Source of the DNA: Mobula birostris
Lineage: Eukaryota
Direction of reading: 5' to 3'
Assembly: GCF_030028105.1 (NCBI RefSeq)
Contig: NC_092372.1
Span: forward strand, 127,705,492 to 127,769,491
Length of the DNA: 64,000 nt
In this document: positions 14,571 through 63,828 of the stretch, piece by piece
Layout: every line of letters starts with the position of its first letter
Position numbering within the stretch: the first letter of the stretch is position 1
Program-made: the position numbers and the translations under genes
Notes under the pieces: model-generated
The model's database searches: none
The model's input: only the letters and a program-made list of their open reading frames with translations
Told to the model about the DNA's origin: nothing

Positions 14571-17500
14571 GACGAGGAGTACTGGTGAGGTGAGCGTGAC
14601 CCCTGTCCTGCCCTTCTCGACACCACTCACTCTCATACCCGCTTCTCTGGAGTGGGGTGTCCAACGGTGAGCAGTCTCCGTCTTGGTCAATTCCGGTGCG
14701 GAGGGGTGTTTTATCAATTCCGGCTTGGCTGTCCAGTGGGGATTACCCACGTCTGCTCTCCAGTCACCATTGATGGCCAGCGCCTTGAACAGTCAGAGAC
14801 TGGCTAACATCACCCATGTCACGGCCCCAGTGAGTCTGCCTATCCCGCAACCATCATGAACAGTTAATCCTTTATGTTATTGACTCTCCTCAAATTCCAA
14901 TTGTCCTGAGCCATCCCTGGTTAGTTAAGCACAAGCCCCATATTGACTGGCTCAGTTGCAAGATTATAGGCTGGAGCCCATTCTGTCACTCCCACTGCCT
15001 CCACCATGCTCAGATCCCCTTGTCCCCAAGCCCAGATTCCCTCTGAGAAATTTCCAGACCTTAGTGCCCTCCCTCCTGAATACATGGACCTCGAGGCTGT
15101 GTTCAGCAAGTCCTGGGCCTCTTCCCTGCCACCTCATCGTCCATATGATTGTGCCATTGACCTCTTGCTGGGCACATCTCCCCCAGGGGGCCACCTGTAT
15201 TCCCTGTACTCCCTGTCCGTACCTGAAACAGAAACCACGTGTAAGTACATTCAAGAGTCTCTGGCTGTAGACATCATCCAGCCGTCTTCATCCCCTGCTG
15301 ATGTCGGTTTTTTTTCTTTTTGGAAAGAAAGATGACTCCTTACATCCATGCTTTGATTACTGGGGACTGAATGAAGTCACTGTTAAGAACCGTTACCCTC
15401 TTCCGCTCATGACCTCAGCATTTGAACTACTACAAGGAGCCTCAGTTTTCACCAGGCTTGATCTCTGTAACACCTACCATCTCATCCGCATCCGCAAAGG
15501 GGATGAGTGGAAGACGGCCTTCAACACCACCTCAGGCCATTACGCGTATCCAGTCATGCCATTCAGTCTCACCAATGCCTCCACTGTCTTCCAAGCCCTG
15601 GTAAATGACGTTCTCAGGAACATACTGAAACAATTTGTTTTTGTGTATCCCGATGACATTTTGAATTTGTTTTAAGTCCCTTGCTGAACACACAGGTCAC
15701 GTCCGTGGAGATCTCCAGCACCTTTTTGTAGAACCACCTCTTTGTGAAGGCTGAGAAATGTGAGATTCATCACAATAGTCTCCTTCCTGAAGTATGTAAT
15801 TTCAGGCGGTTCCATTCAGATGGACCAACAGAAGGTCAAGGTGGTGGTTAAATGGCCCCAACCCTCGACTCAGGAGTTGCTACACTTCTTGGGCTTCGCT
15901 AACTTCTAATGCCACTTCATCAGAAATTACACTACACTGGCTGCACCACTCACGGCTCTTACCTCATCTGCTGTCAGATTCTCCTGGTCCCCTGCTGCTG
16001 AAAAAGCATTCTCTGACCTGAAGGAACGTTTCACCTCTGCCCCCATCCTGATTCAGCCCAACACCAACCAGCAGTTTATTGTGGAGTTGGATGTGTCTGA
16101 CATTGGTGTAGGAGCTGTTCTCTCTCAGCGCTCGGCCAAAGATGAGAACGTATACTCTTGCGCCGCCTTCTCTCACCACCTCATTCCGATGGAGCAGAAT
16201 TACGATGTCGGAAACCGGGAGCTGCTGGCTGTGAAGCTAGCTCTGGAGAAGTGGAGGCATTGGCTGGAGGGAGCCAAGGTACCAAGCGTCTCAACTCCCA
16301 TCAAGCTTATTGGTCCCTGTTGTTTTTGTCAAGATTCAATTTTACTCTGTCCTTCCACTCCGGCTCTAAGAATGGAAAACCTGATGCCTTCCCCTGAGGA
16401 TTTCTTTCCTCTGAGACCCCTGAGGTACCCGATGTCATCCTCCCTGCTCACTGTCTCATGGGTGCAGTGCAATAGGACATTGAAGCCATGGTGCAAACCG
16501 CTCAACAGAGCGAGGCAACCCCTAGTCAATGCTCCGCTAACCGTGTTTATGTTCCCAGCTCTGTCCGCTCACAGATATTGCAGTGGGGTCATTCTTCCCG
16601 GTTATCCTGTCACCCTGAAACCAAACGTACTCAGGCCTTCATCAGTCAGTGGTTCTGGTGGCCCTCCATTGGAGATGACATCCGCAAATTTGTCTCAGTC
16701 TGTGCTCAAGGCAAGAACTCTAACTGGTCACCCGCTGGTCTGTTACAAACCCTGTCTATCCCCAAGAGACCTGGTCCCACGTTGCCCTGGATTTTGTCAC
16801 TGGTCATCCCCCATCAGATGGTAACACCACCATTCTCACAGTAGTTGATCACTTCTCCAAGTCTACACTTCATTCCTTTACCTAAACTCCCCTCTGCCAA
16901 AGAAACGGCAAATTACTAATACTGCATGTTTTCAAATTACATGGTTTACCTGTAGATGTCGTGTCAGATAGGGGCTTTCAATTCACATCCAACTTCTGGA
17001 GGGCATTCTGTAATTTTCTAAGTGTCTTTGTGAGTCTGTCTTCAGGATTCCGCCCACAGACCAATGGCCAGACCGAGCGGGCCAGCCAACAGCTAGAGAC
17101 TGTATTGCGGTGTCTGGTCTCCCAGAACCCCTCCGCGTGGAGTCAGCAGCTACCCTGGACCATAAACTCTCATCTGTTCTCATCCACTGGTCTGTCCCCC
17201 TTGGCTATCCTTGAAGTGCTGCCTTGGCTATCAACCTCCACTGTTTCCTACCCAAGAGAAGGAGGTTGGTGTTCCATCTGCCGAGGCATTCATCCGCCAT
17301 TGTCAACAGACGTGGAGGTGCACTCGCTCTGCCCTTCTCCGTGCCTCAGCTAGGATCGAGTGTCAAGCTGACCGTCATTGCTCCAAGGCCCCATGTTACC
17401 GCCAGGGACAGCGTGTGCGGCTTTCAACCCGAGAGCTGCCGCTCAAGGTGGATTCCCGCAAGCTTCACCTCGCTTCATCAGCCCCTTTCCCATTGCTAAA

Positions 17501-44133: not shown

Positions 44134-46653
44134 TGATTAGGGGTATTGTCTTTAAGCACACTATACAGGGGGAGCATAAATACAGCAGCTCATGGAATGA
44201 ATCGTTGATAGAAATTGGCTACGCCTAAAGAGTCCTATAGTTTTTTAGTAGTGTGGGGTGATGGAAATTGATAATAACGGTTACTTTTGATGGGAGGGGT
44301 TTTGCACCTACTGAGGAGATGTGATGGCCGAGAAAGTCAATGTTGACAACCCAGACTGGCAGCAAAAGTTTTCAGGGATGAGATACTGGTTCGGATTTGG
44401 ACACACTAGTGAGCAGTATGCCATCCAGGTAAACTAAAAGAAAATCTTTTATACAGGGTCCATCAGCTGTTGCAAAGCCTATGCTGCATCTTTCAGCCTG
44501 AGCGGCATGCACAGAAACTCAAAGAGGTCAAACGGGGTTATCACAGCTGTTTTGGGAATGTCCTCAGAGGACACATGCACCTGATGGTACCCCTAACTAG
44601 ATCAACTTCAGAAAAAATTAATTTTCTGGCTAAACTTACTGAAAATCCACGGATGTGTGGGGCTGGGGAATGAGGGGCAGTGGTGGCCTCGTTAAGGCTT
44701 TGGTAATAACCACTTGGGCAGCAACCACCATCGGACTTAGGGACCATATAGAGGGGTGAAGCCCAGCAGCTGCTCGATCGGCATACAATGAGGGACAAGA
44801 GACTTTATTGCTCTTTACCTTCTCACCAATAGGCAATTCTGGCAGCACTCTCACTCGGGCACCCGTGTCACACAGGAAGCGTTGTCCTGAGAGGGTGTCT
44901 GTGATAAGCAGTAGACTACCTTGGCAGCTGGAACCCATGGTGTTCACAGACCTCTGATGTCCCAGTGCATTGGAACTGTTAAAGCAGCAAGGCAGTCGGC
45001 ACTTCCTAGTGCTCATACCGATGTGAGTGTGGTAAGAACACAGGTCCTGGGTCATCTATTTACGTCCTTATATCGGGGGCCTTGCTGACCGGGCTTATTG
45101 AGGTTAGAGAAAGGAGGAGGAATGATGCACCGCTGCCCGGCTGCGTGTAGACCATCAGCCATTTTAGCAAGCTCCCTATGGTCCTTCATAGGTTCATTAG
45201 CGAGGGCTATGCAAACTGGATCAGGCATTTGCTGCATGAAAAGTTCTTTGAAAATAAAACAGAGATTTCCCAGGAGAGACAGGGCATGGTCCATTAGCTC
45301 CGGTGGCTTAGCATCACTGAGGCTGGGCAAGCAGAACAACTGCTTGGCACACTTCCCATTGTCCGAAGTCTGAGTTTTCAGCGATCAGTATTTATCATGT
45401 TCGGGCGGGTATTCTAGTAGAATCACCACTCTTTCAGCCATAGAGTGGTGAGTTGCACCACCATATCGAAATATTTGGTGTTGTCGGTGGAGATTTCTCA
45501 CAGCGCGAATTGGACCTTGGCCTGTACAAACCAAACGCCAGCATTTTGCTCCCAAAACTCCGGCAGTTTCAAAGTGACTGAATTGGCCAACATGTTCAAT
45601 AACTCTGGATTAGTCCTAGAGGATCAGAGTCACAAATATAGATTTCTGCAAATAAAATGGAAGAGGTGTTTAATGTTTTAAAAAAGCCATAACAACTCAT
45701 TTATTGTACTCAAAACACTGAACACAAAGTGTGGTAAAAACTTCATGTAGGTAGACCAGCATGTCAGACAGTTTCTTCATGTCAAACCTCAACTCAATGT
45801 CAGTGATTGTGAATTATGTACATTTCCACCAGTTATGTTACCCTACACTTATACCTCTTATGATTCACATATCTCGTCGAAGTCAGTGCATCCACACTAA
45901 GACACAGCTTTATCAGATGTTATTCTCAATGTAGAATAGCTTGCAGTTTCTAACTGCATCTGAAGAATGTCTCTGTTGGGCTTCTGCAGCTAAATTTTAT
46001 ATCTGCATATTTGCAAAGGACCAACATGGTCTACAGTCTTTTGTTTTCATACTGGATCTAGCAGTTGATAAAGTGGTAATAATCCAATTGTATGAAAACA
46101 TCACATTGTGAACTGTGAAATAACTTCGCCTACAAGACTCAGAACCTGAGACAGGGACTACAAAGATTGTAAGTGGAAAAAATGTTTCAAAGAACCTGTC
46201 TGAGCAACGTTATTTTAATCTTTCAAATTTTTGTAGCTTTATTCACCAACTGTTAAATCTTCCACTTTCTACCTGTAATTAATATATTTGACTACAGATC
46301 TTGGCATCTTGTTCAGGGTATTTCTTTATTTTCACCCACTGTTTAAAGAAATTTACTCAGTTTCTAGCTTTGATCTCAATAAAAAGGTCTCCACATGAAA
46401 CAATAACCTGTCACTTTGGGAACTTCTGGATTTGTCTTTTATCTCTAAAATGTTAGCGGTTATGTGATAGTATTCTCTTTTAGTTTTCCCTTAACATCTG
46501 AGGGAAGTTGTGGCAGAGAAGAGTACTGTCTCACTGTACTCATTATGTCAATCACCTGTGACGATTGGCTTCTTGTTATGATGGTTCCTCTGACTGCTGA
46601 GCACTAATTCTCCAAGTCTTTTTGAAATACATAATTTCCTTGTTTGCATATAT

Positions 46654-47230
46654 GTTGTTGTTGTTGTTGTTGTTCGTCCATCGTTGACGTCGAAGAGGAC
46701 CTCGACATCATAATGATGGTGTCGAGACTAGCGCGTGATTTGGATTTAAGTGAGGGAGAGTTGTGCAGCGTCAGCCTCACTCTCTCTTCCCAATTCCCAT
46801 CTGGATCCAGTGGCAAGACAGAGTCTAGACGGCTGGAGATGGGACTAGGCGCAGTGGATGACCAGGACGTCTTCTGTGTCTTGTCCTGCTCTACACGTTC
46901 CACGACGCTTGCAGAGACCGCCTTCTTGACCGTTGGACCTTCCGCTGGTCTCGTCCGCTCAATCCGCCGGAGTCTGTCTTCACATGCTGGGATAGACAAC
47001 TCCCTATCTCACCGAGGGTTTGAGACCCGTCGGCTACCCTCACCTGGTTTAGCCGGTTTGTCGAAGCCGTTGCCCGGGGTGTGGCCGCTGACGCATGCAA
47101 ACAGCTACGGGGAGCCACAGGTGAGAGCTGAGTGCCAGGTGGGGACCAAAGGTGGACTAACCGCCTTGAAAAGGACACGACATGTTCCCCCACCAGAGGT
47201 GCTACCCCTCCCTGACACCCCATACACCCA
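46654..47230 (-). mobile_element. Young, CpG-rich non-autonomous RTE-type retroposon with (CAA)n tail and 5' HDV-like ribozyme
   Basis: (TTG)n at 46653-46674; TSD tgcatatat (46645-46653 / 47231-47239); many intact CpGs; no tRNA A/B boxes. Confidence 0.85.
47036..47221 (-). ncRNA. HDV-like self-cleaving ribozyme (predicted)
   Basis: P1 GGGGUGU/ACACCCC; P2 GCUCUCACCUGU/A(C)CAGGUGAGGGU; P3 GGC/GCC; L3 UCCCCGU plus hairpin; P1.1 CC/GG; GCAA; P4 CGG..CCG; J4/2 G-C-U-A-A. Confidence 0.8.
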
Positions 47231-48029
47231 TGCATATATACATGCATATATATAAATGTACCCAAACTGTAAGGGAGACTTCAGCTTGAAGTACAAGTGT
47301 AAAGCAGTGCATCATCTATCTGGATGGACACTTGAACCACCAAGGCATAGGGGCCTGTTATGTGGTGGGTCAGTCAAAAGTCATTGAGTGGCCCGTTTGA
47401 AGAATGCAGCAGCTCTTACACATCAGTTGCCTTGAGTGCCACGGCACTGGTGTCCGGTTTCAGACTCCCCCGTGGTATAAGAGTAGCACATGCAGGAGGC
47501 TCAGCCTCTTTTCTTTCTTCCCCACGGCCCACCGCAGGCTGAGGTTGTGATCAGTGCTGAAGAACCGTTGGGGAAAGTATGCTGCACATGTAAAGGAACC
47601 CGCACACCCTCTGCTTGTGGAATTTTAGTATCATAGTTTGTGTAACTTAGGGTGGCTTAGTTATTTGGTTGACCGTTTTACTGTTTCTGTCAATAAATAA
47701 TTAATGTGCTTATTCTTAATGAGTGTCTTCTGTCTCACTTATCAAACTATGAACTTGCTTCTTCCTAACAGAGGCTATAGACCAAATACTGGTAACTGGG
47801 ATTAATATAGACAGGCACTTGAGGGTTGGAGTGGAGTGGATGGGCCGAAGGGCTGGTTTGTGTACTGTATGATAACATGACTCTCCGAGGTATAAGAAAT
47901 CTTCCAATTTGGTTTTACATTGGTCCCAGTTTTCAGTAAGTATTGCACATTGACAACCATCTGAACCATTAACTTCAATGATTCTTTGAATGCGAGTGGG
48001 TACCTACAGTGATAAGTTAATTGCCTGGT

Positions 48030-59197: not shown

Positions 59198-62100
59198 TGA
59201 TGATGATAGCTGGTTCTTCGCTTGTGAAGATCAGGATGGAAGAAGAGTCCTCAGGATTGTTGGTGACTGTAGAGGCCAATTCTGGATCTACAGACTCTGG
59301 AGCTTTAGGGAGACAGGAACACTTGGGATATGGATGCTTTGGTAATAGGATCCTTCCTGCATCTCCTCTTCTCTTCAGCAACCACTCTTCTCGGTTCCTC
59401 AACATTCTTGGCTGCTCCTTGGATCAGCATTCTCCTGCGATCTCTGAAATAAGCCAGCTACTGCCACTCATTAACTCTGCCGAGAGAGCTACTGTTCAGG
59501 GCAACACAATCTCTCTTGCCTTGAGAGAGTTTTCTGCAGATTACTGCTTTCCGTAACCTGGAGCTATCGATGTGAGACATGTGGCCTGACCAGCGAAGCT
59601 GCTTGAGCAGCAAAGTGGCTTCAATGCTTGAATGTTCAGCCTTCTCTAGGACCTCATTGTTGGAAATACAATCCTGCCAGGTGGTACCCATAATGGAGCA
59701 GAGGCAGAGCTGATGAAAGAGCTCAAGTAACTGGATTTGCTTGCACTATAAGACCCAGGTTTCAAAGCAGTGTTGTGACTCTTTTGTACAACCTGCCAAA
59801 TGCGCTGTTTGCCTTTGCCAGTCTGTTGTCGATCTCTTTGTCGATCTTGGCATCTGACGAGACAGTGCACCCCAGGTAGCTGAACTGGTGGACTGTCTTC
59901 AGCTCTACCTCACCGATAGTGATGCGGGGAGGGTGGTAATCTCCCTGAGGTGCGGGCTGAGGGAGAACTTCTGTCTTCTTCAAGCTGACTTCCAGTCCGA
60001 TGAGCTTGGCAGCCTCTGCAAAGCAGAATATTATACGCTGCAGGGCTGTCTGTGTGTGGGCAACAAGGGCAGCATCGTTGGCGAAGAGTAGCTCTCGGAT
60101 GAGTTGCTCCAATGTAATCCCCTCAGGTTGAACAGGCTGCCATCGGTGCGGTATTGGATGTAAACACCACCCTCGTCATCAAGGTCTTCTCTGGCCCTTT
60201 CGAGCATCATGCTGAAGAAGATGGTGAAGAGAGTTGGTGCGAGGACACAGCCTTGCTTTACTCCGTTACCTATTGGGAAGGGTACTGAGAGGTCGTTGTT
60301 GTGTCTGACTTGGCCACTCTGAACTTCATGTAGCTGGATGATCATGCTGAGGAACTTTGGGGGGCATTCCAGTTGTTCCATAATTTGTCACAGACCTTCT
60401 CTGCTCACGGTGTCGAATGCTTTGGTAAGGTCGACAAGCGTCACGTATAATCCCTTGTTCTGTTCCCTACATTTCTCTTGGAGCTGCCTGAGAACAAATA
60501 CCATGTCGGTGGTGCTCCTGTTGGCTCTGAAGTCACACTGGCTCTCTGGGAGGTGTTCTTCTGCAATGATGGGCACCAATCTGTTCAGGAGTACTCTTGC
60601 GAGGATTTTTCCTGCAATAGAAAGCAGAGTTATCCCCTGGTAGCTGGAGCAGACTGACTTTTCTCCCTCGTTCTTATACAGGGCGATGATGACTGCATCA
60701 TGGAGGTCCTGTGGTAGTTTACCTTGTTCCCAGTAGCAGACAAAGAATTCATGGAGTTTGATGGGTAGTTCTGGGCCCTCATGCTTCCAAACCTCTGGTG
60801 GGATTCCATCAACTCCCACTGCCTTGCCACTTTTCAGCTGCTCTATGGCCTTGACTGTCTCTTCTAGGGTTGGAATCTTGTCCAGTTCTGTTTCCTCTGG
60901 CTGTTGTGGGATGTGATGAGTTGCTGAGTCTTAGACCATGCAGTTGGTGCTGAAGAGAGTCTGGAAATGTTCTGACCACCAGATCAGGATGGACGCCTTG
61001 TCTGTGAAGAGCGCCTGATTGTCTGCACTGCGCAAGGCATTCTGAACCTGGTGCGAAGGGCTGTACACTGCTCTCAGGGCTCCATAAAACCCTCTGTAGT
61101 CACCGGTGTCTGCGCAAAGTTGAGTTCTGGTACTGTGGAGGAGCAGAGGGATCTGGGGGTACATGTCCACAGATCCCTGAAAGTTGCCTCATAGGTGGAT
61201 AGGGTAGATAAGGAAGCTTATGGGGTGTTAGTCTTCATAAGTCGAGGGATAGAGTTTGAGTCATGAGGTAATGACACAGCTCTATAAAACTCTGGTTAGG
61301 CCACACTTGGAGTACTGTGTCCAGTTCTGGTCGCCTCACTATAGGAAGGATGTGGAAGCATTGGAAAGGGTACAGAGGAGATTTACCAGGATGCTGCCTG
61401 GTTTAGAGAGTATGCATTATGATCAGAGATTAAGGGAGCTAGGGCTTTACTCTTTGGAGAGAAGGAGGATGAGAGGAGACATGATAGAGGTGTGCAAGAT
61501 AATAAGAAGAATAGATAGAGTGGATAGCCAGTGTCTCTTCCCCAGGGCACCACTGCTCAATACAGGAGGACATGGCTTTAAGGTAAGGGGTGGGAAGTTC
61601 AAGGGGGATATTACAGGAAGGTTTTTTGCTCAGAGAGTGGTTGGTGCGTGGAATGCACTGCTTGAGTTTGTGGTGGAGGCAGATACACTAGTGAAGTTTA
61701 AGAGACTACTAGACAGGTATATGGAGGAATTTAAGGTGGGGGGTTATATGGGAGGCAGGGTTTAAGGTTCGGCACAACATTGTGGGCCGGAGGGCCTGTA
61801 CTGTGCTGTATTATTCTATGTTCTATGTTCTAGGTTCTCTTTGCAAGGCTGGTCCACCACACATTCTGAATCTCTTGAAACTTACGCTGGAGGTTGCTGC
61901 ATACAAGGTGGAAGGCTGCTTTCTTATCAGGACAAGATGGCTGAGCAAGGTGCGCCTGGTGGTCAGATCTCTTTTTCGCCAGCAATTCTTGGATCTTCTG
62001 GTTGTTTTCATCGAACCAGTCCTTGTTCTTCTTTGTGGAAAACATTAGGACTTCTTCAGAAGTTTGCAGGATGGTGGTTTTTAGGTGCTCTCAAAGCACT

Positions 62101-63828
62101 TCTGGAGAGGAATCTGTGGGGAAAGTGGGATCCTGAAGCCTTGACTGAAGATTCGTCTGGAAGTCAGCTTTCACTTCAGCTGAGTGGAGGTTGCCAAAGT
62201 GAAACTTCTTCCTTGGAGCGCCTCCTCTCTCTGGCTTGGGTTTGAAATGGAGACTGAGTTTGCAGCGGACAAGACGATGGTCCGCATGACACTGTGCGCT
62301 GGGCGTCACTTGGGTGAGTAAGACGTCCCGAAGGTCTCTCTGGCACACCAAGATGTAGTCTATGAGGTACCAATGCTTAGACCGAGGATGCATCCAGGTT
62401 GACCTCAGACTGCCTTTCTGCTGGAAGATGGTGTTAGTGCTGGTGAGTTGCTGCTCTGCGCAAAACTCTAACAGAAGGTGCCCGTTGTCGTTGCAGTTTC
62501 CAACACCATGTTTGCCAAGAACTCCTTTCCAGGCTTCTGAATCTTGGCCTACTCTGGCATTGAAGTCGCCAAGGATGAAGACCTTGTCGTCTGCAGGGGC
62601 GTTCCGTACGAGGTTGTGCAGATCAGCGTAAAACTTGTCCTTCTCTGCAGGATCCGCTTGAAGAGTGTGGCATGCTGCTTGGTTCGAAGTGGGAGGCGCA
62701 TGGAGATGATGTGGTCGGAGTGACCCGCTGGCAATTTTCAAGTTTGGAGGCAATGGAGTTCCTGACCATAAAGCCAACGCCAGAAAGGCGTCTCTCAGTC
62801 TCTGGCTTGCCCGACCAGTAGAGGGTGTAGCCGGCGCCATGTTCTTGAAGGTTGCCTTCCTCTGGGAAGCGGACTTCTCTGAGAGCAGCAATGTCGACAT
62901 TCAGTCTTGAAAGTTCCTGCACAACTAGAGCAGATCATCGTTCTGGGTGACCACTGTCTATTGTATCGAGCGTGGTTCTGACATTCCAGCATGCAAGTTT
63001 TCGTCCTTGCACTCCTTGGGAGGCAGGTGTATACCTTTTCTTTTTTTGTTGTCGTTCAACCACATTGAGGATGCCTGTTGACAGCGGCCAGCCAACTGGG
63101 AAAAATGGAAGTGAGCTTTGGTTAGGCCAACTTTTCTGGGCCCGTCTCCATGTGGAGCAGCAGTGCTGTCCCTAGAGAAGGCTGCTTGGTCGTTCAGGGT
63201 GCTGCCGAATGATATCATCATCTCCGGGGTCAACATCAGACGACCCGTACACCTGAACCGCCTGCACACAGGATCGGAACTGCGGCTTCCAGTGTCATCT
63301 TCCACCTGCTGATTTCGCCCCTTTCCCATCACTGCAGGGCTTGATGAATGGTCGGGGAGGGTGGTCATAGATGTGGGCATGTCCTTTGGCCTGCGCAGTG
63401 GTATTTTAAGTGGAATGCAGTGTGCGCGTTACTGGCCCCACCCTTTACACCCAGGGTACATCTGCCATAGCCTAGCAAGCTGGGACGGTGTCAGCGAGGT
63501 CTTCGGGTCATAGGATTTACGTCGGAGTGTCCTTCTCCTAGGTGGATGGCCTGACAGGGCTAACGAGCCCAGCCTACCCATCCAGTCACACCTCCGGACA
63601 CTTGGTCACGCCATGACGTAGCAAGCTCGGTGGAAACGGCAGGCATCGACGGGAAGGTGTTGCTACGGACGCAGTAATGTAGGAGAGGCCATTTGCAGTG
63701 GCCTCCTGCCGAGCAGGCCAGACAGTGACCACGCAGCGATTACTAAACCGGAAAAGGAAAGGCGATGTATTGTACGTACACTTACCCTGGGTGAGCGGGA
63801 CGTCAGGCCCGGACCCCACCCACCCCCC
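59198..63828 (-). mobile_element. Near full-length RTE-clade LINE with ~800-bp 5' UTR and (ATC)n tail
   Basis: APE domain KLACWNVRT...ILGDFNARVG...TWMHPRSKHWYLIDY...DHRLV; RT VDLTKAFDTV, GVKQGCVLAP, LLFANDAAL, FSYLG; CpG-rich 5' end; no clear TSD. Confidence 0.95.
61129..61833 (+). mobile_element. Young CR1 3' fragment nested in the RTE (ORF2 C-terminus open at 61256-61765)
   Basis: [39 protein letters not shown]; (TTCTATG)n tail; gttct duplicated at 61124-61128 and 61834-61838. Confidence 0.95.

What the first reader, a model, noticed from the sequence alone, without database searches (positions are those of the whole stretch)
47036..47221. Complete HDV-like ribozyme defining the 5' end of a young non-coding RTE-type element
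Seen (minus strand): every element of the nested double pseudoknot maps in the HDV order. P1 GGGGUGU (47221-47215) pairs with ACACCCC (47082-47076). P2 is 47128-47117 with 47048-47036 (one bulge). P3 is GGC (47116-47114) with GCC (47085-47083). L3 starts UCCCCGU, and P1.1 uses GG at 47075-47074. The GCAA-C strand is identical to genomic HDV, a P4 hairpin follows, and J4/2 reads G-C(47052)-U-A-A. The predicted cut lies 9 nt inside the TSD, and those 9 nt (tgggtgtat) look like a partial duplication of the P1 strand. Established: HDV-like ribozymes process the 5' ends of R2, RTE and L1Tc/Ingi elements. Inference: this is a promoter-independent, ribozyme-headed SINE that cuts itself out of read-through transcripts. 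It could also truncate any host pre-mRNA transcribed on the minus strand.
Basis: partly seen in the sequence, partly recalled or inferred. Interest (0 to 1): 0.85.

Follow-up and report, generated by a model that had tools for sequence, protein, structure and literature searches.

The report
Ribozyme-headed RTE deletion element, manta ray
A 577-base stripped-down copy of a jumping gene in a ray genome starts with a fold of the hepatitis-delta self-cutting RNA type, a known arrangement that here carries an extra hairpin in the catalytic loop and a doubled first strand, so the cut probably lies at the element's very first bases.

Summary
The combination is far beyond chance. The candidate has 4 of 4 HDV-specific extras. 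None of 20,289 relaxed-descriptor hits in 957 shuffled windows has 3 or more.

The element (47230-46654, minus strand) has a 9-bp TSD and an (AAC)7 tail. It belongs to a very abundant ray family: 13,917 and 7,887 contig pieces laid in two organisms.

A 76%-identical head sits at the 5' end of an EN+RT LINE in metagenome contig L001. That LINE's endonuclease relatives are named 'craniofacial development protein 2-like', which is RTE-type.

The family majority, a subfamily and L001 keep or restore P4, the L3 hairpin and P2.

In L001 and P0030 the upstream unit keeps P1. The cut is therefore probably at the TSD boundary, not 9 nt inside it.

No Rfam HDV model matches, and cleavage is untested. 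The scan has noted this family before on other DNA of this genome (49 notes).

The parts
47231..47239 (.). Target-site duplication, 5' copy (atatatgca in minus-strand reading)
   Evidence: Read; identical 9 of 9 to 46645-46653
46645..46653 (.). Target-site duplication, 3' copy
   Evidence: Read
46654..47230 (-). Whole non-autonomous element (577 nt): LINE head plus short 3' end and tail
   Evidence: Bounded by the TSDs. Contig depth from other copies spans 46685-47228 only (the tool skipped the flanks as repeats). Its two long sense-strand ORFs have no Pfam domain. No tRNA.
47224..47230 (-). Unit A: T47230 plus GGGUGU 47229-24. Upstream copy of the P1 5' strand and the proposed main P1 strand, with the cut at the element's first bases.
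   Evidence: Forms 6 bp with 47077-82, -10.1 kcal/mol. A unit in this place occurs in 10 of 13 family heads. In L001 it shows a compensatory U-A to G-C change against the P1 3' strand.
47215..47221 (-). An alternative P1 strand and the 5' half of the P1.2 basal stem.
   Evidence: 7 bp with 47076-82, -14.1 kcal/mol. With its extension it forms 10 bp with 47130-39, -18.3 kcal/mol.
47130..47220 (-). Structured J1/2 domain (P1.2-like hairpin); basal stem 47220-11 with 47130-39
   Evidence: MFE -42.7 kcal/mol, z -2.66, 2 of 200 shuffles as good. Changes that keep the stem: U15.G35 to G.U in L001, U15.G35 to U-A in family variants (47135 C>T), and G.U to A-U in P0030.
47117..47128 (-). P2 5' strand
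   Evidence: Lies in the most conserved block of all 14 translated copies. Identical in L001.
47114..47116 (-). P3 5' strand GGC
47106..47113 (-). L3 proper, UCCCCGUA; C47112 and C47111 form P1.1
   Evidence: L001 reads UCCUCGAA. Positions 47110 and 47109 vary C to A in the family.
47087..47105 (-). Hairpin inserted in L3: stem GCUG/CAGC, loop containing the palindrome GCAUGC
   Evidence: Stem kept in L001. The family majority adds a U101-A91 pair (47091 A>T, 88-99.8% of depth depending on the run). P0028 implies G105-C87 changed to A-U.
47083..47085 (-). P3 3' strand GCC
47076..47082 (-). P1 3' strand ACACCCC
   Evidence: ACCUCCC in L001.
47070..47075 (-). P1.1 GG (47075-74) and J1.1/4 GCAA
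   Evidence: Identical in L001. A subfamily reads UACA instead of GCAA (loose ends).
47054..47069 (-). P4 hairpin
   Evidence: 3 bp here. 6 bp in the family majority (47057 T>C, 88-99.6% of depth depending on the run). A subfamily carries the compensatory change G68-C55 to C68-G55 (47068 C>G with 47055 G>C in the same 2 contigs of X12; loose-end consensus in X1 and X9).
47049..47053 (-). J4/2 GCUAA, with C47052 in the place of the catalytic cytosine
   Evidence: Identical in L001. No listed variant (41 rows not shown).
47036..47048 (-). P2 3' strand with bulged C47046
   Evidence: L001 keeps 12 bp with the bulged C moved (read).
46701..46726 (-). 3'-terminal stem-loop just upstream of the tail; inferred recognition site for the LINE protein
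   Evidence: 11-nt arms, 91% complementary, 4-nt loop. The function is inferred.
46654..46674 (-). (AAC)7 microsatellite-like tail
   Evidence: RTE-related retroposons end in such repeats (PMC6007223 abstract).

Best explanation
The stretch is the head of a 577-nt internal-deletion derivative of an RTE-type LINE. That head is an HDV-like (nested double pseudoknot) self-cleaving ribozyme inherited from the LINE's 5' end.

The family head carries two tandem 9-nt units that can each serve as the P1 5' strand.

Most likely mechanism (inferred):
- In a read-through transcript the upstream unit (47229-24 here) pairs with 47077-82 as P1. The RNA is then cut at the element's first bases, next to the TSD.
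- That hairpin holds P1 and the long P2 together, like helix P1.2 of the mosquito RTE ribozyme drz-Agam-2-1.
- Cutting at the downstream unit is an alternative that yields one-unit copies.
- The 5'-OH RNA is then copied by the LINE's protein, which recognises the 3' stem-loop and (AAC)n tail.

This particular copy is a slightly decayed, probably dead-end insertion. It lacks the first G of unit A and has one broken pair in P4 and one in the L3 hairpin.
For: - Geometry and conserved HDV nucleotides are all present. The candidate has 4 of 4 HDV-specific extras, against 0 of 20,289 shuffle hits with 3 or more.
- The family is very abundant: 13,917, 7,887 and 28 contig pieces laid in three organisms.
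- The family majority restores C66-G57 in P4 and U101-A91 in the L3 hairpin. A subfamily has a compensatory G-C to C-G change in P4.
- None of the 38 listed variant places falls in P1, P2, P3, P1.1 or J4/2.
- Translated copies show P2 5' + P3 5' + L3 start as the most conserved block: Q46 L47 S48 V50 A51 P52 are invariant in 15 rows.
- L001 is 75.8% identical over 414 nt. It keeps every helix and continues into EN and RT ORFs.
- Unit A is present in 10 of 13 heads.
- L001: unit A with the P1 3' strand forms 6 contiguous bp including a U-A to G-C change. Unit B loses 2 of 7 pairs.
- P0030: G19 to A breaks P1(B) but gives A-U in the P1.2 stem.
- Energies: P1(A) plus P1.2 gives -28.4 kcal/mol, against -14.1 for P1(B) alone in the window.
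- P1.2 domain z-score is -2.66.
- P1.2 with short linkers and a long P2 speeds drz-Agam-2-1 almost 1000-fold (PMC4908430).
- Tandem duplications of the P1-forming strand occur at R2 5' junctions (PMC3774820).
Against: - No Rfam HDV-type model matches the window or L001, even at E up to 10.
- L3 carries a 19-nt hairpin at the active site. I found no precedent for this.
- In this copy unit A gives only 6 bp and leaves C47076 unpaired, while unit B gives a perfect 7 bp.
- 2 of 13 heads (P0027, P0003) start at unit B, as expected if cutting happens there.
- The choice between units rests on one DNA comparator plus one back-translated protein. With two sequences, 120 of 500 shuffles reach the observed covariation.
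- L001 has an A.C mismatch in P4 and a U.U mismatch in P1.2.
- P0003 implies a break in the middle of P1.
- The read-laying tool skipped 47229-47320, so family 5' ends could not be read directly. 41 variant rows were not shown.
- No RNA ends and no cleavage data.
Confidence: 0.55

Rival explanations
1. The only P1 strand is 47221-15 and the cut is at 47222/47221. The 9 nt upstream are made anew at each integration, by duplication or template slippage at the 5' junction, and play no role in the fold.
For: - Perfect 7-bp P1, -14.1 against -10.1 kcal/mol for the upstream unit in this copy.
- 2 of 13 heads begin at this unit.
- Junction duplications of characteristic length are made at R2 insertions (PMC3774820).
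- Unit A differs between lineages in its last 2 nt (AU in the window and L001, CA implied in the ENA family).
Against: - In L001 this strand loses 2 of 7 pairs while the upstream unit co-varies.
- P0030's change breaks this P1 but improves the P1.2 stem.
- P1(B) and the 10-bp stem with 47130-39 (-18.3 kcal/mol) exclude each other.
- A duplication regenerated in 10 of 13 independent insertions, with a fixed 9-nt length and no fixed target, lacks a known mechanism.
Confidence: 0.25
2. The fold resembles HDV ribozymes but does not cleave. The conserved 5' region serves another purpose in the LINE, such as an internal promoter, protein binding or translation start. Alternatively the ribozyme was inactivated by the L3 hairpin.
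For: - No Rfam HDV-family hit.
- The 28-nt L3 departs from every HDV-like ribozyme I know of (recalled). I found no paper describing such an insertion (listing only).
- Identity to L001 is only modestly higher in the core (76 of 94) than downstream (139 of 198).
Against: - All catalytic-core motifs are kept across lineages that are 24% diverged: UCC.CG, GG, GCAA, GCUAA with the C.
- Helices are maintained by compensatory or wobble changes.
- The fold sits exactly at the element's 5' end, where such ribozymes act in R2, R4, L1Tc and RTE (PMC3774820).
Confidence: 0.15
3. Chance resemblance in an ordinary repeat.
For: A relaxed descriptor hits 11.5 loci per shuffled 128 kb. Whole-stretch MFE z is only -0.57.
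Against: - 0 of 20,289 shuffle hits carry 3 or more of the 4 HDV-specific extras.
- The fold is conserved in L001 and in 14 translated copies.
Confidence: 0.02

Closest known systems
drz-Agam-2 ribozymes of Anopheles gambiae RTE elements (drz-Agam-2-1)
   Same: An HDV-like ribozyme with a structured J1/2 helix (P1.2), short linkers and an extended P2 that together 'pinch' P1 and P2 (PMC4908430; passages and section 2 read). Its RTE location is recalled from Ruminski et al. 2011, which I could not open. It is cited as ref 12 for RTE in PMC3774820.
   Different: - No sequence or covariance-model match.
- A hairpin is inserted in L3.
- The P1 strand is present twice in tandem.
- The host is a vertebrate, with a very high copy number.
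R2 ribozymes and R2-derived internal-deletion elements (SIDEs)
   Same: - A ribozyme at the 5' end releases the element RNA from a co-transcript.
- Non-autonomous derivatives keep only the ribozyme end and the 3' end (PMC3414825, search listing and start of abstract only).
- Tandem duplications of the strand that forms P1 occur at 5' junctions, and extra nucleotides are added at run-off (PMC3774820 passages).
   Different: - R2 is specific for 28S rDNA, and its upstream P1 strand can be 28S sequence. Here the target is not fixed and both units belong to the element.
- The LINE clade differs.
L1Tc / NARTc HDV-like ribozyme (trypanosomes)
   Same: A ribozyme in the first bases shared by a LINE and its truncated non-autonomous partner (PMC3185411, PMC4035085, PMC3383444; search listings and starts of abstracts only).
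   Different: There the 77-nt head doubles as an internal promoter. It has no L3 hairpin, no P1.2 domain and an unrelated sequence.
Genomic HDV ribozyme
   Same: Same order of helices. L3 has U-C-C-x-C-G. After P1 comes GG then GCAAC. J4/2 has C followed by xAA. The HDV sequence is recalled, not taken from a call.
   Different: HDV has an 8-nt L3, a very short J1/2, a long P4 and a circular RNA context.

Membership tests
HDV-like self-cleaving ribozyme | P1 of 6-7 bp beginning at the cleavage-site G | tested here: met
   Two candidate strands: 47221-15 (7 bp) and 47229-24 (6 bp), both with 47076-82. Which one is used remains unresolved.
HDV-like self-cleaving ribozyme | P2 closing the outer pseudoknot, with its 3' strand after J4/2 | tested here: met
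   12 bp with one bulge. 12 bp kept in L001. 91.7% of cells paired in fixed columns.
HDV-like self-cleaving ribozyme | P3 of 3 bp closed by a short L3 (about 7-8 nt; the size is recalled) | tested here: not met
   P3 GGC/GCC is present and invariant. L3, however, is 28 nt: 8 nt, then a 19-nt hairpin, then 1 nt. The hairpin is conserved in L001 and in translated copies.
HDV-like self-cleaving ribozyme | P1.1: two C-G pairs between L3 and the bases just after P1 | tested here: met
   C47112 and C47111 with G47074 and G47075. Invariant in L001 and in 11 of 13 back-translated copies.
HDV-like self-cleaving ribozyme | Catalytic cytosine in J4/2 | tested here: met
   C47052 in GCUAA. Identical in L001. 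Only its position was tested, not its role.
HDV-like self-cleaving ribozyme | P4 hairpin between P1.1 and J4/2 (dispensable in minimal forms; recalled) | tested here: met
   3 bp here and 6 bp in the family majority. A subfamily has a compensatory change.
HDV-like self-cleaving ribozyme | Match to a curated HDV-type covariance model | tested here: not met
   0 matches at gathering score in the window. No HDV-type family at E up to 10 in 46600-47500 or in L001 400-720.
HDV-like self-cleaving ribozyme | Site-specific self-cleavage giving 5'-OH and 2',3'-cyclic phosphate ends | not testable with these tools
   No raw RNA reads were available. The one read-laying run used contigs only.
RTE-clade LINE derivative (non-autonomous) | Head shared with a LINE that encodes AP-type endonuclease and reverse transcriptase | tested here: met
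   L001:439-849 is 75.8% identical to 47240-46845 and continues into EN and RT ORFs.
RTE-clade LINE derivative (non-autonomous) | The partner LINE belongs to the RTE clade | tested here: inconclusive
   - L001's EN is 50% identical (E 2e-23) to a 'craniofacial development protein 2-like' protein of Narcine.
- The homologous LINE in the window has 62-79% identity to many proteins of that name.
- That this name marks RTE/BovB-type endonucleases is recalled. No tree was built.
RTE-clade LINE derivative (non-autonomous) | Microsatellite-like 3' tail instead of poly(A), and a TSD | tested here: met
   (AAC)7 at 46674-54 and a 9-bp TSD. The feature is described in the PMC6007223 abstract.
RTE-clade LINE derivative (non-autonomous) | 3' end shared with the partner LINE | tested here: inconclusive
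   L001 ends before its 3' end, and identity falls to 26 of 95 over 46719-46655. The window's own RTE-type LINE shows no similarity to the element.
Classical SINE (Pol III head) | Head derived from tRNA, 7SL or 5S | tested here: not met
   No tRNA found and no Rfam match. It is better called a deletion derivative (SIDE-like) than a SINE.

The most novel reading that the evidence does not exclude
The ray RTE family represents a distinct structural subclass of HDV-like ribozymes that current models miss. Three features would define it:
- Its catalytic loop L3 is a three-way junction with a conserved hairpin, whose loop holds the palindrome GCAUGC.
- Its P1 strand is duplicated.
- That duplication makes the downstream unit a switch: it can pair either as P1 or as the closing stem of a P1.2 'pinch' domain, giving two cut sites and one-unit and two-unit progeny.

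With tens of thousands of copies, many in introns, it would also be a large source of self-cleaving sites in ray pre-mRNAs.
Probability: 0.3. Interest if true: 0.65.

Novelty: new variant of a known kind. Interest (0 to 1): 0.45.

Why it matters
HDV-like ribozymes at LINE 5' ends are an established way for promoter-less retrotransposons to free their RNA from host transcripts. This example therefore adds a vertebrate RTE family with very high copy number rather than a new principle.

Two things would interest a ribozyme specialist.
- A conserved hairpin sits inside L3, the loop that builds the active site. This tests how much that loop tolerates, and it explains why model-based searches miss the family.
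- The P1 strand is doubled. Together with a P1.2-like domain, this offers a natural case of alternative pairing that could set the cleavage site and the 5' end of the progeny.

The family also gives a ready data set (thousands of copies) for covariation analysis, and a possible cause of intron-borne RNA cleavage in rays.

Tried and rejected
**Steps that led nowhere**
- Rfam found no HDV-type hit at gathering score or at E up to 10. I take this as weak evidence, because of the two large insertions.
- Whole-stretch MFE significance is z -0.57. This is uninformative for a pseudoknot.
- Self-blast and tandem-repeat search found no second copy in the window.
- phmmer with the sense ORF 46999-46607 gave 16 hits. 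Of the 8 I scanned in Pfam, 7 had no family and P0019 matched a bacterial PPC domain, which I take as spurious; the other 8 were not scanned. None carried an RT or EN domain, so the element's own sequence cannot place it in a LINE clade.
- The antisense ORF search gave 3 proteins (Mobula birostris, M. hypostoma, one ENA) but no DNA.
- Back-translation of 14 sense-frame 'proteins' leans towards the window's letters at silent positions. For that reason the A45 to U45 change in P2 of the main ENA family could not be judged.
- The snail protein P0032 aligned too poorly to use for pairs.
- X21 raw reads laid 0 reads, so they gave no test.
- The 20-mer scan of viral and prokaryote collections gave 0 hits.
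- Covariance model R1, built from the core of the window and L001, found only the candidate itself (121.6 bits). The next best hit had E 0.66. The degraded RTE-type LINE at 60-63.8 kb therefore has no recognisable core.
- I looked by eye for a fold at 63830-63640 and found none convincing.
- Other descriptor hits (25326/25296-25220, 54732, 47326-47540) are at chance level.
- Paper search was badly targeted: all 20 listed papers had 0 occurrences of 'HDV-like' or 'ribozyme'. It therefore says nothing about prior reports in elasmobranchs.
- One search ('hdv-like', 'l3 loop', 'ribozyme') returned 5 papers. I saw only the listing, and no title or abstract start describes a natural L3 insertion.
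- Ruminski et al. 2011 and Webb et al. 2009 were not seen (recalled). Supplements were not opened.
- I did not test whether a host gene runs on the minus strand.
Full report
**1. What is in the sequence**

On the minus strand, a 577-nt insert (47230-46654) lies between perfect 9-bp direct repeats (atatatgca, 47239-31 and 46653-45). It ends in (AAC)7.

- P1: 47221-15 with 47082-76 (7 bp).
- P2: 47128-17 with 47048-36 (12 bp, C47046 bulged).
- P3: GGC with GCC.
- L3 begins UCCCCGU.
- GG at 47075-74.
- GCAAC.
- J4/2 GCUAA, with C47052.

Three features depart from the usual pattern. P4 has only 3 bp, L3 is 28 nt, and J1/2 is 86 nt.

Other checks on the stretch:
- The window holds no second copy.
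- There is no tRNA-like head.
- The two long sense-strand ORFs of the element have no Pfam family.
- Rfam gives nothing at gathering score in the whole window.
- Rfam gives no HDV-type family at E up to 10 around the site.

**2. Chance**

A relaxed HDV descriptor is not specific. It finds 11 hits in the real window and a mean of 26.5 per dinucleotide-shuffled window (12 shuffles).

I then asked for four features known beforehand from HDV ribozymes: P2 of at least 10 bp, GGGCAA after P1, L3 of the form U..CG, and J4/2 of the form GC.AA.
- The candidate has all four.
- Of 20,289 hits in 957 shuffled windows, 18,977 have none, 1,294 have one, 18 have two and none has three or four.

The HDV sequence features themselves are recalled, not drawn from a call.

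**3. The family**

The antisense ORF finds proteins of Mobula birostris and M. hypostoma, so the genome is a manta or devil ray or a close relative.

Contigs of three organisms were laid on 46600-47320 at 80% likeness. They gave 13,917 (X1), 7,887 (X9) and 28 (X12) pieces, with depth only over 46685-47228. The tool skipped both flanks as repeats. X21 raw reads gave 0.

This copy differs from the family majority at about six places: 46764, 46944, 46945, 47057, 47091 and 47177. That is about 1% of 544 nt, so the copy is young.

Two of these private changes break pairs that the majority has:
- 47057 T>C (88-99.6% of depth, depending on the run) makes C66-G57. P4 then becomes CGGCUU/AAGCCG (6 bp).
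- 47091 A>T (88-99.8%) adds U101-A91 to the L3 hairpin.

A subfamily carries 47068 C>G together with 47055 G>C. They occur in the same 2 contigs in X12, in 52 and 77 contigs in X1, and in the loose-end consensus in X1 and X9. This changes G68-C55 to C68-G55, a compensatory change in P4. The same subfamily has 47058 T>C (U.G).

The 40 listed variant rows cover 38 places. None lies in P1, P2, P3, P1.1 or J4/2. The 12 that fall inside 47036-47128 hit P4, J1.1/4, the L3 insert and L3 positions 4-5. Forty-one more rows were not shown, so this is suggestive only.

**4. Translated copies**

The sense-frame ORF 47265-46894 finds 14 'proteins' that are translations of other copies: ENA, Logan and one from Biomphalaria pfeifferi.

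The invariant columns are Q46 L47 S48 V50 A51 P52. These correspond to the P2 5' strand, the P3 5' strand and the start of L3. LNQVRV (J4/2 plus the P2 3' strand) is also well kept.

Parsimonious back-translation shows:
- C66-G57 in 11 of 13 rows.
- An implied G105-C87 to A-U change in the L3 hairpin of P0028.
- A wobble in P3 of P0029.

This method leans towards the window's letters at silent positions.

**5. A DNA relative and the parent LINE**

A 20-mer from the conserved block hit one metagenome contig, L001. It hit none in the viral or prokaryote collections.

L001:439-849 is 75.8% identical to 47240-46845. It then runs on into ORFs with endonuclease and reverse-transcriptase motifs. By tblastx these are 45-71% identical to a degraded LINE in this window at 60115-63350 (EN and RVT_1 by Pfam).

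- That LINE's endonuclease has 422 relatives at E up to 1e-5.
- Most of the named ones are 'craniofacial development protein 2-like', from an electric ray, birds, octopus, urchins, oyster, coral and shrimp, at 51-79% identity.
- L001's own EN piece is 50% identical to one of them.
- I recall that this name marks RTE/BovB-type endonucleases. No tree was made.

A microsatellite-like tail fits RTE-related retroposons (PMC6007223 abstract).

Identity between the window and L001 by segment:
- 21 of 23 in P2 5'/P3 5'/L3.
- 76 of 94 in the core.
- 66 of 93 in J1/2.
- 139 of 198 just downstream.
- 26 of 95 at the 3' end.

The element is therefore the LINE's first ~510 nt joined to a different short 3' end, which has a stem-loop at 46726-46701.

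**6. The cut site**

This is a family trait.
- 7 of the 9 main-family translations read [G/W]CQ directly before GCQGG.
- P0030 has two such units.
- L001 has GGGGGGCAU before GGGGUGG.
- P0026 is partial.
- P0027 and P0003 lack it.

In all, 10 of the 13 heads that reach the 5' end have the unit.

This closes J1/2 into a hairpin of -42.7 kcal/mol (z -2.66, 2 of 200 shuffles).

Duplex energies in kcal/mol:

| Pairing | Window | L001 |
|---|---|---|
| Unit A with P1 3' strand | -10.1 | -12.0 |
| Unit B with P1 3' strand | -14.1 | -10.0 |
| Unit B with the J1/2 end | -18.3 | -15.1 |

Pair counts on the two-sequence alignment A4:
- With P1 = unit A plus the J1/2 stem: 92.0% of 88 cells pair, and 2 pairs change on both sides. 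These are U-A to G-C in P1 and U.G to G.U in the stem.
- With P1 = unit B: 89.9% of 69 cells pair, no pair changes on both sides, and 2 of 7 P1 pairs are broken in L001.

P0030's G19 to A breaks P1(B) but makes A-U in the stem. The family variant 47135 C>T turns U.G into U-A in the stem.

With two sequences these counts are not significant: 120 of 500 shuffles do as well.

The resulting layout is P1, a 2-3 nt linker, a stable helix, a 1-nt linker and a 12-bp P2. [quoted passage not shown]

Tandem duplications of the P1-forming strand, and extra nucleotides at run-off, are described for R2 junctions (PMC3774820, passages).

I therefore favour a cut at the element's first G, with unit B as an alternative site that would give the one-unit copies. 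In this copy unit A lacks its first G (T47230 stands there), so its own head is impaired.

**7. What speaks against a working ribozyme**

- No curated model matches.
- The L3 hairpin sits in the active-site loop, and I found no precedent. One search gave a listing only, and one search was uninformative.
- L001 has one mismatch in P4 and one in the stem.
- P0003 implies a mid-P1 break.
- There are no RNA-end or cleavage data.
- Four runs guessed to be RNA hold 42-48% of the sampled words, but that label is a guess.

**8. Comparison and verdict**

HDV-like ribozymes at the 5' ends of R2, R4, L1Tc and RTE elements are established (PMC3774820). So are deletion derivatives that keep ribozyme and 3' end (PMC3414825, listing only).

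This is a new variant of that kind. It sits in a vertebrate RTE family, has an L3 hairpin, and has a doubled P1 strand with a P1.2-like domain.

The scan had already noted this family on other DNA of this genome (49 notes). One follow-up likewise moved the cut site outward.

Noticed in passing
window 60115-63350 (minus), possibly up to about 63830: A degraded RTE-type LINE. It has an endonuclease ORF at 62091-62900 and an RVT_1 ORF at 60388-60819, and is 45-71% identical by tblastx to the LINE in L001. A G-rich run (GGGGGGTGGGTGGGG, about 63828-63812) might be its head. However, the core model R1 finds no ribozyme there, and I saw no convincing fold by eye.
   Followed up: partly
window 62094-62900 (minus) and its homologues: The endonuclease is 51-79% identical to proteins of birds (Manacus, Lepidothrix, Pitangus, Willisornis), octopus, sea urchins, oyster, coral, shrimp and an electric ray. 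This spread suggests horizontal transfer of this RTE lineage. Three hits are filed under a bacterium (Thiolapillus sp., contigs of 554-847 nt), which is probably contamination.
   Followed up: no
P0032 (Biomphalaria pfeifferi) versus window 47265-46894: A snail 'hypothetical protein' matches the translated ribozyme region at 58% over 49% of the query, including the QLSPVAPRSC block. A related head therefore seems to exist in a mollusc genome. The alignment was too poor to use for pair counts.
   Followed up: partly
window 47093-47098 (minus), loop of the L3 hairpin: The self-complementary hexamer GCAUGC sits in the hairpin loop. It is kept in L001, and CLHA in 11 translated copies is compatible with it. 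It could allow loop-loop pairing between two RNAs. This is pure speculation.
   Followed up: no
window 47229-47252: The 5' flank is a 12-mer (tatatatgcatg) repeated twice. The last two letters of the second copy coincide with the first two letters of the insert. This may be microhomology at the 5' junction, or chance.
   Followed up: no
window 46851 and 46889: Many contigs leave the element here: 89 and 64 loose ends in X1, and 75 at 46851 in X9. Other family forms must therefore carry different sequence on either side. L001 is nonetheless colinear across this point.
   Followed up: partly
The Rfam gathering-score scan of the whole window returned 0 matches of any family.
   Followed up: partly
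window 16081-16824 (plus): This ORF has RNase H domains of the LTR-retrotransposon type: RT_RNaseH_2 at 3.8e-16.
   Followed up: no
run X19: A freshwater metatranscriptome holds 8% of the sampled words of the element.
   Followed up: no
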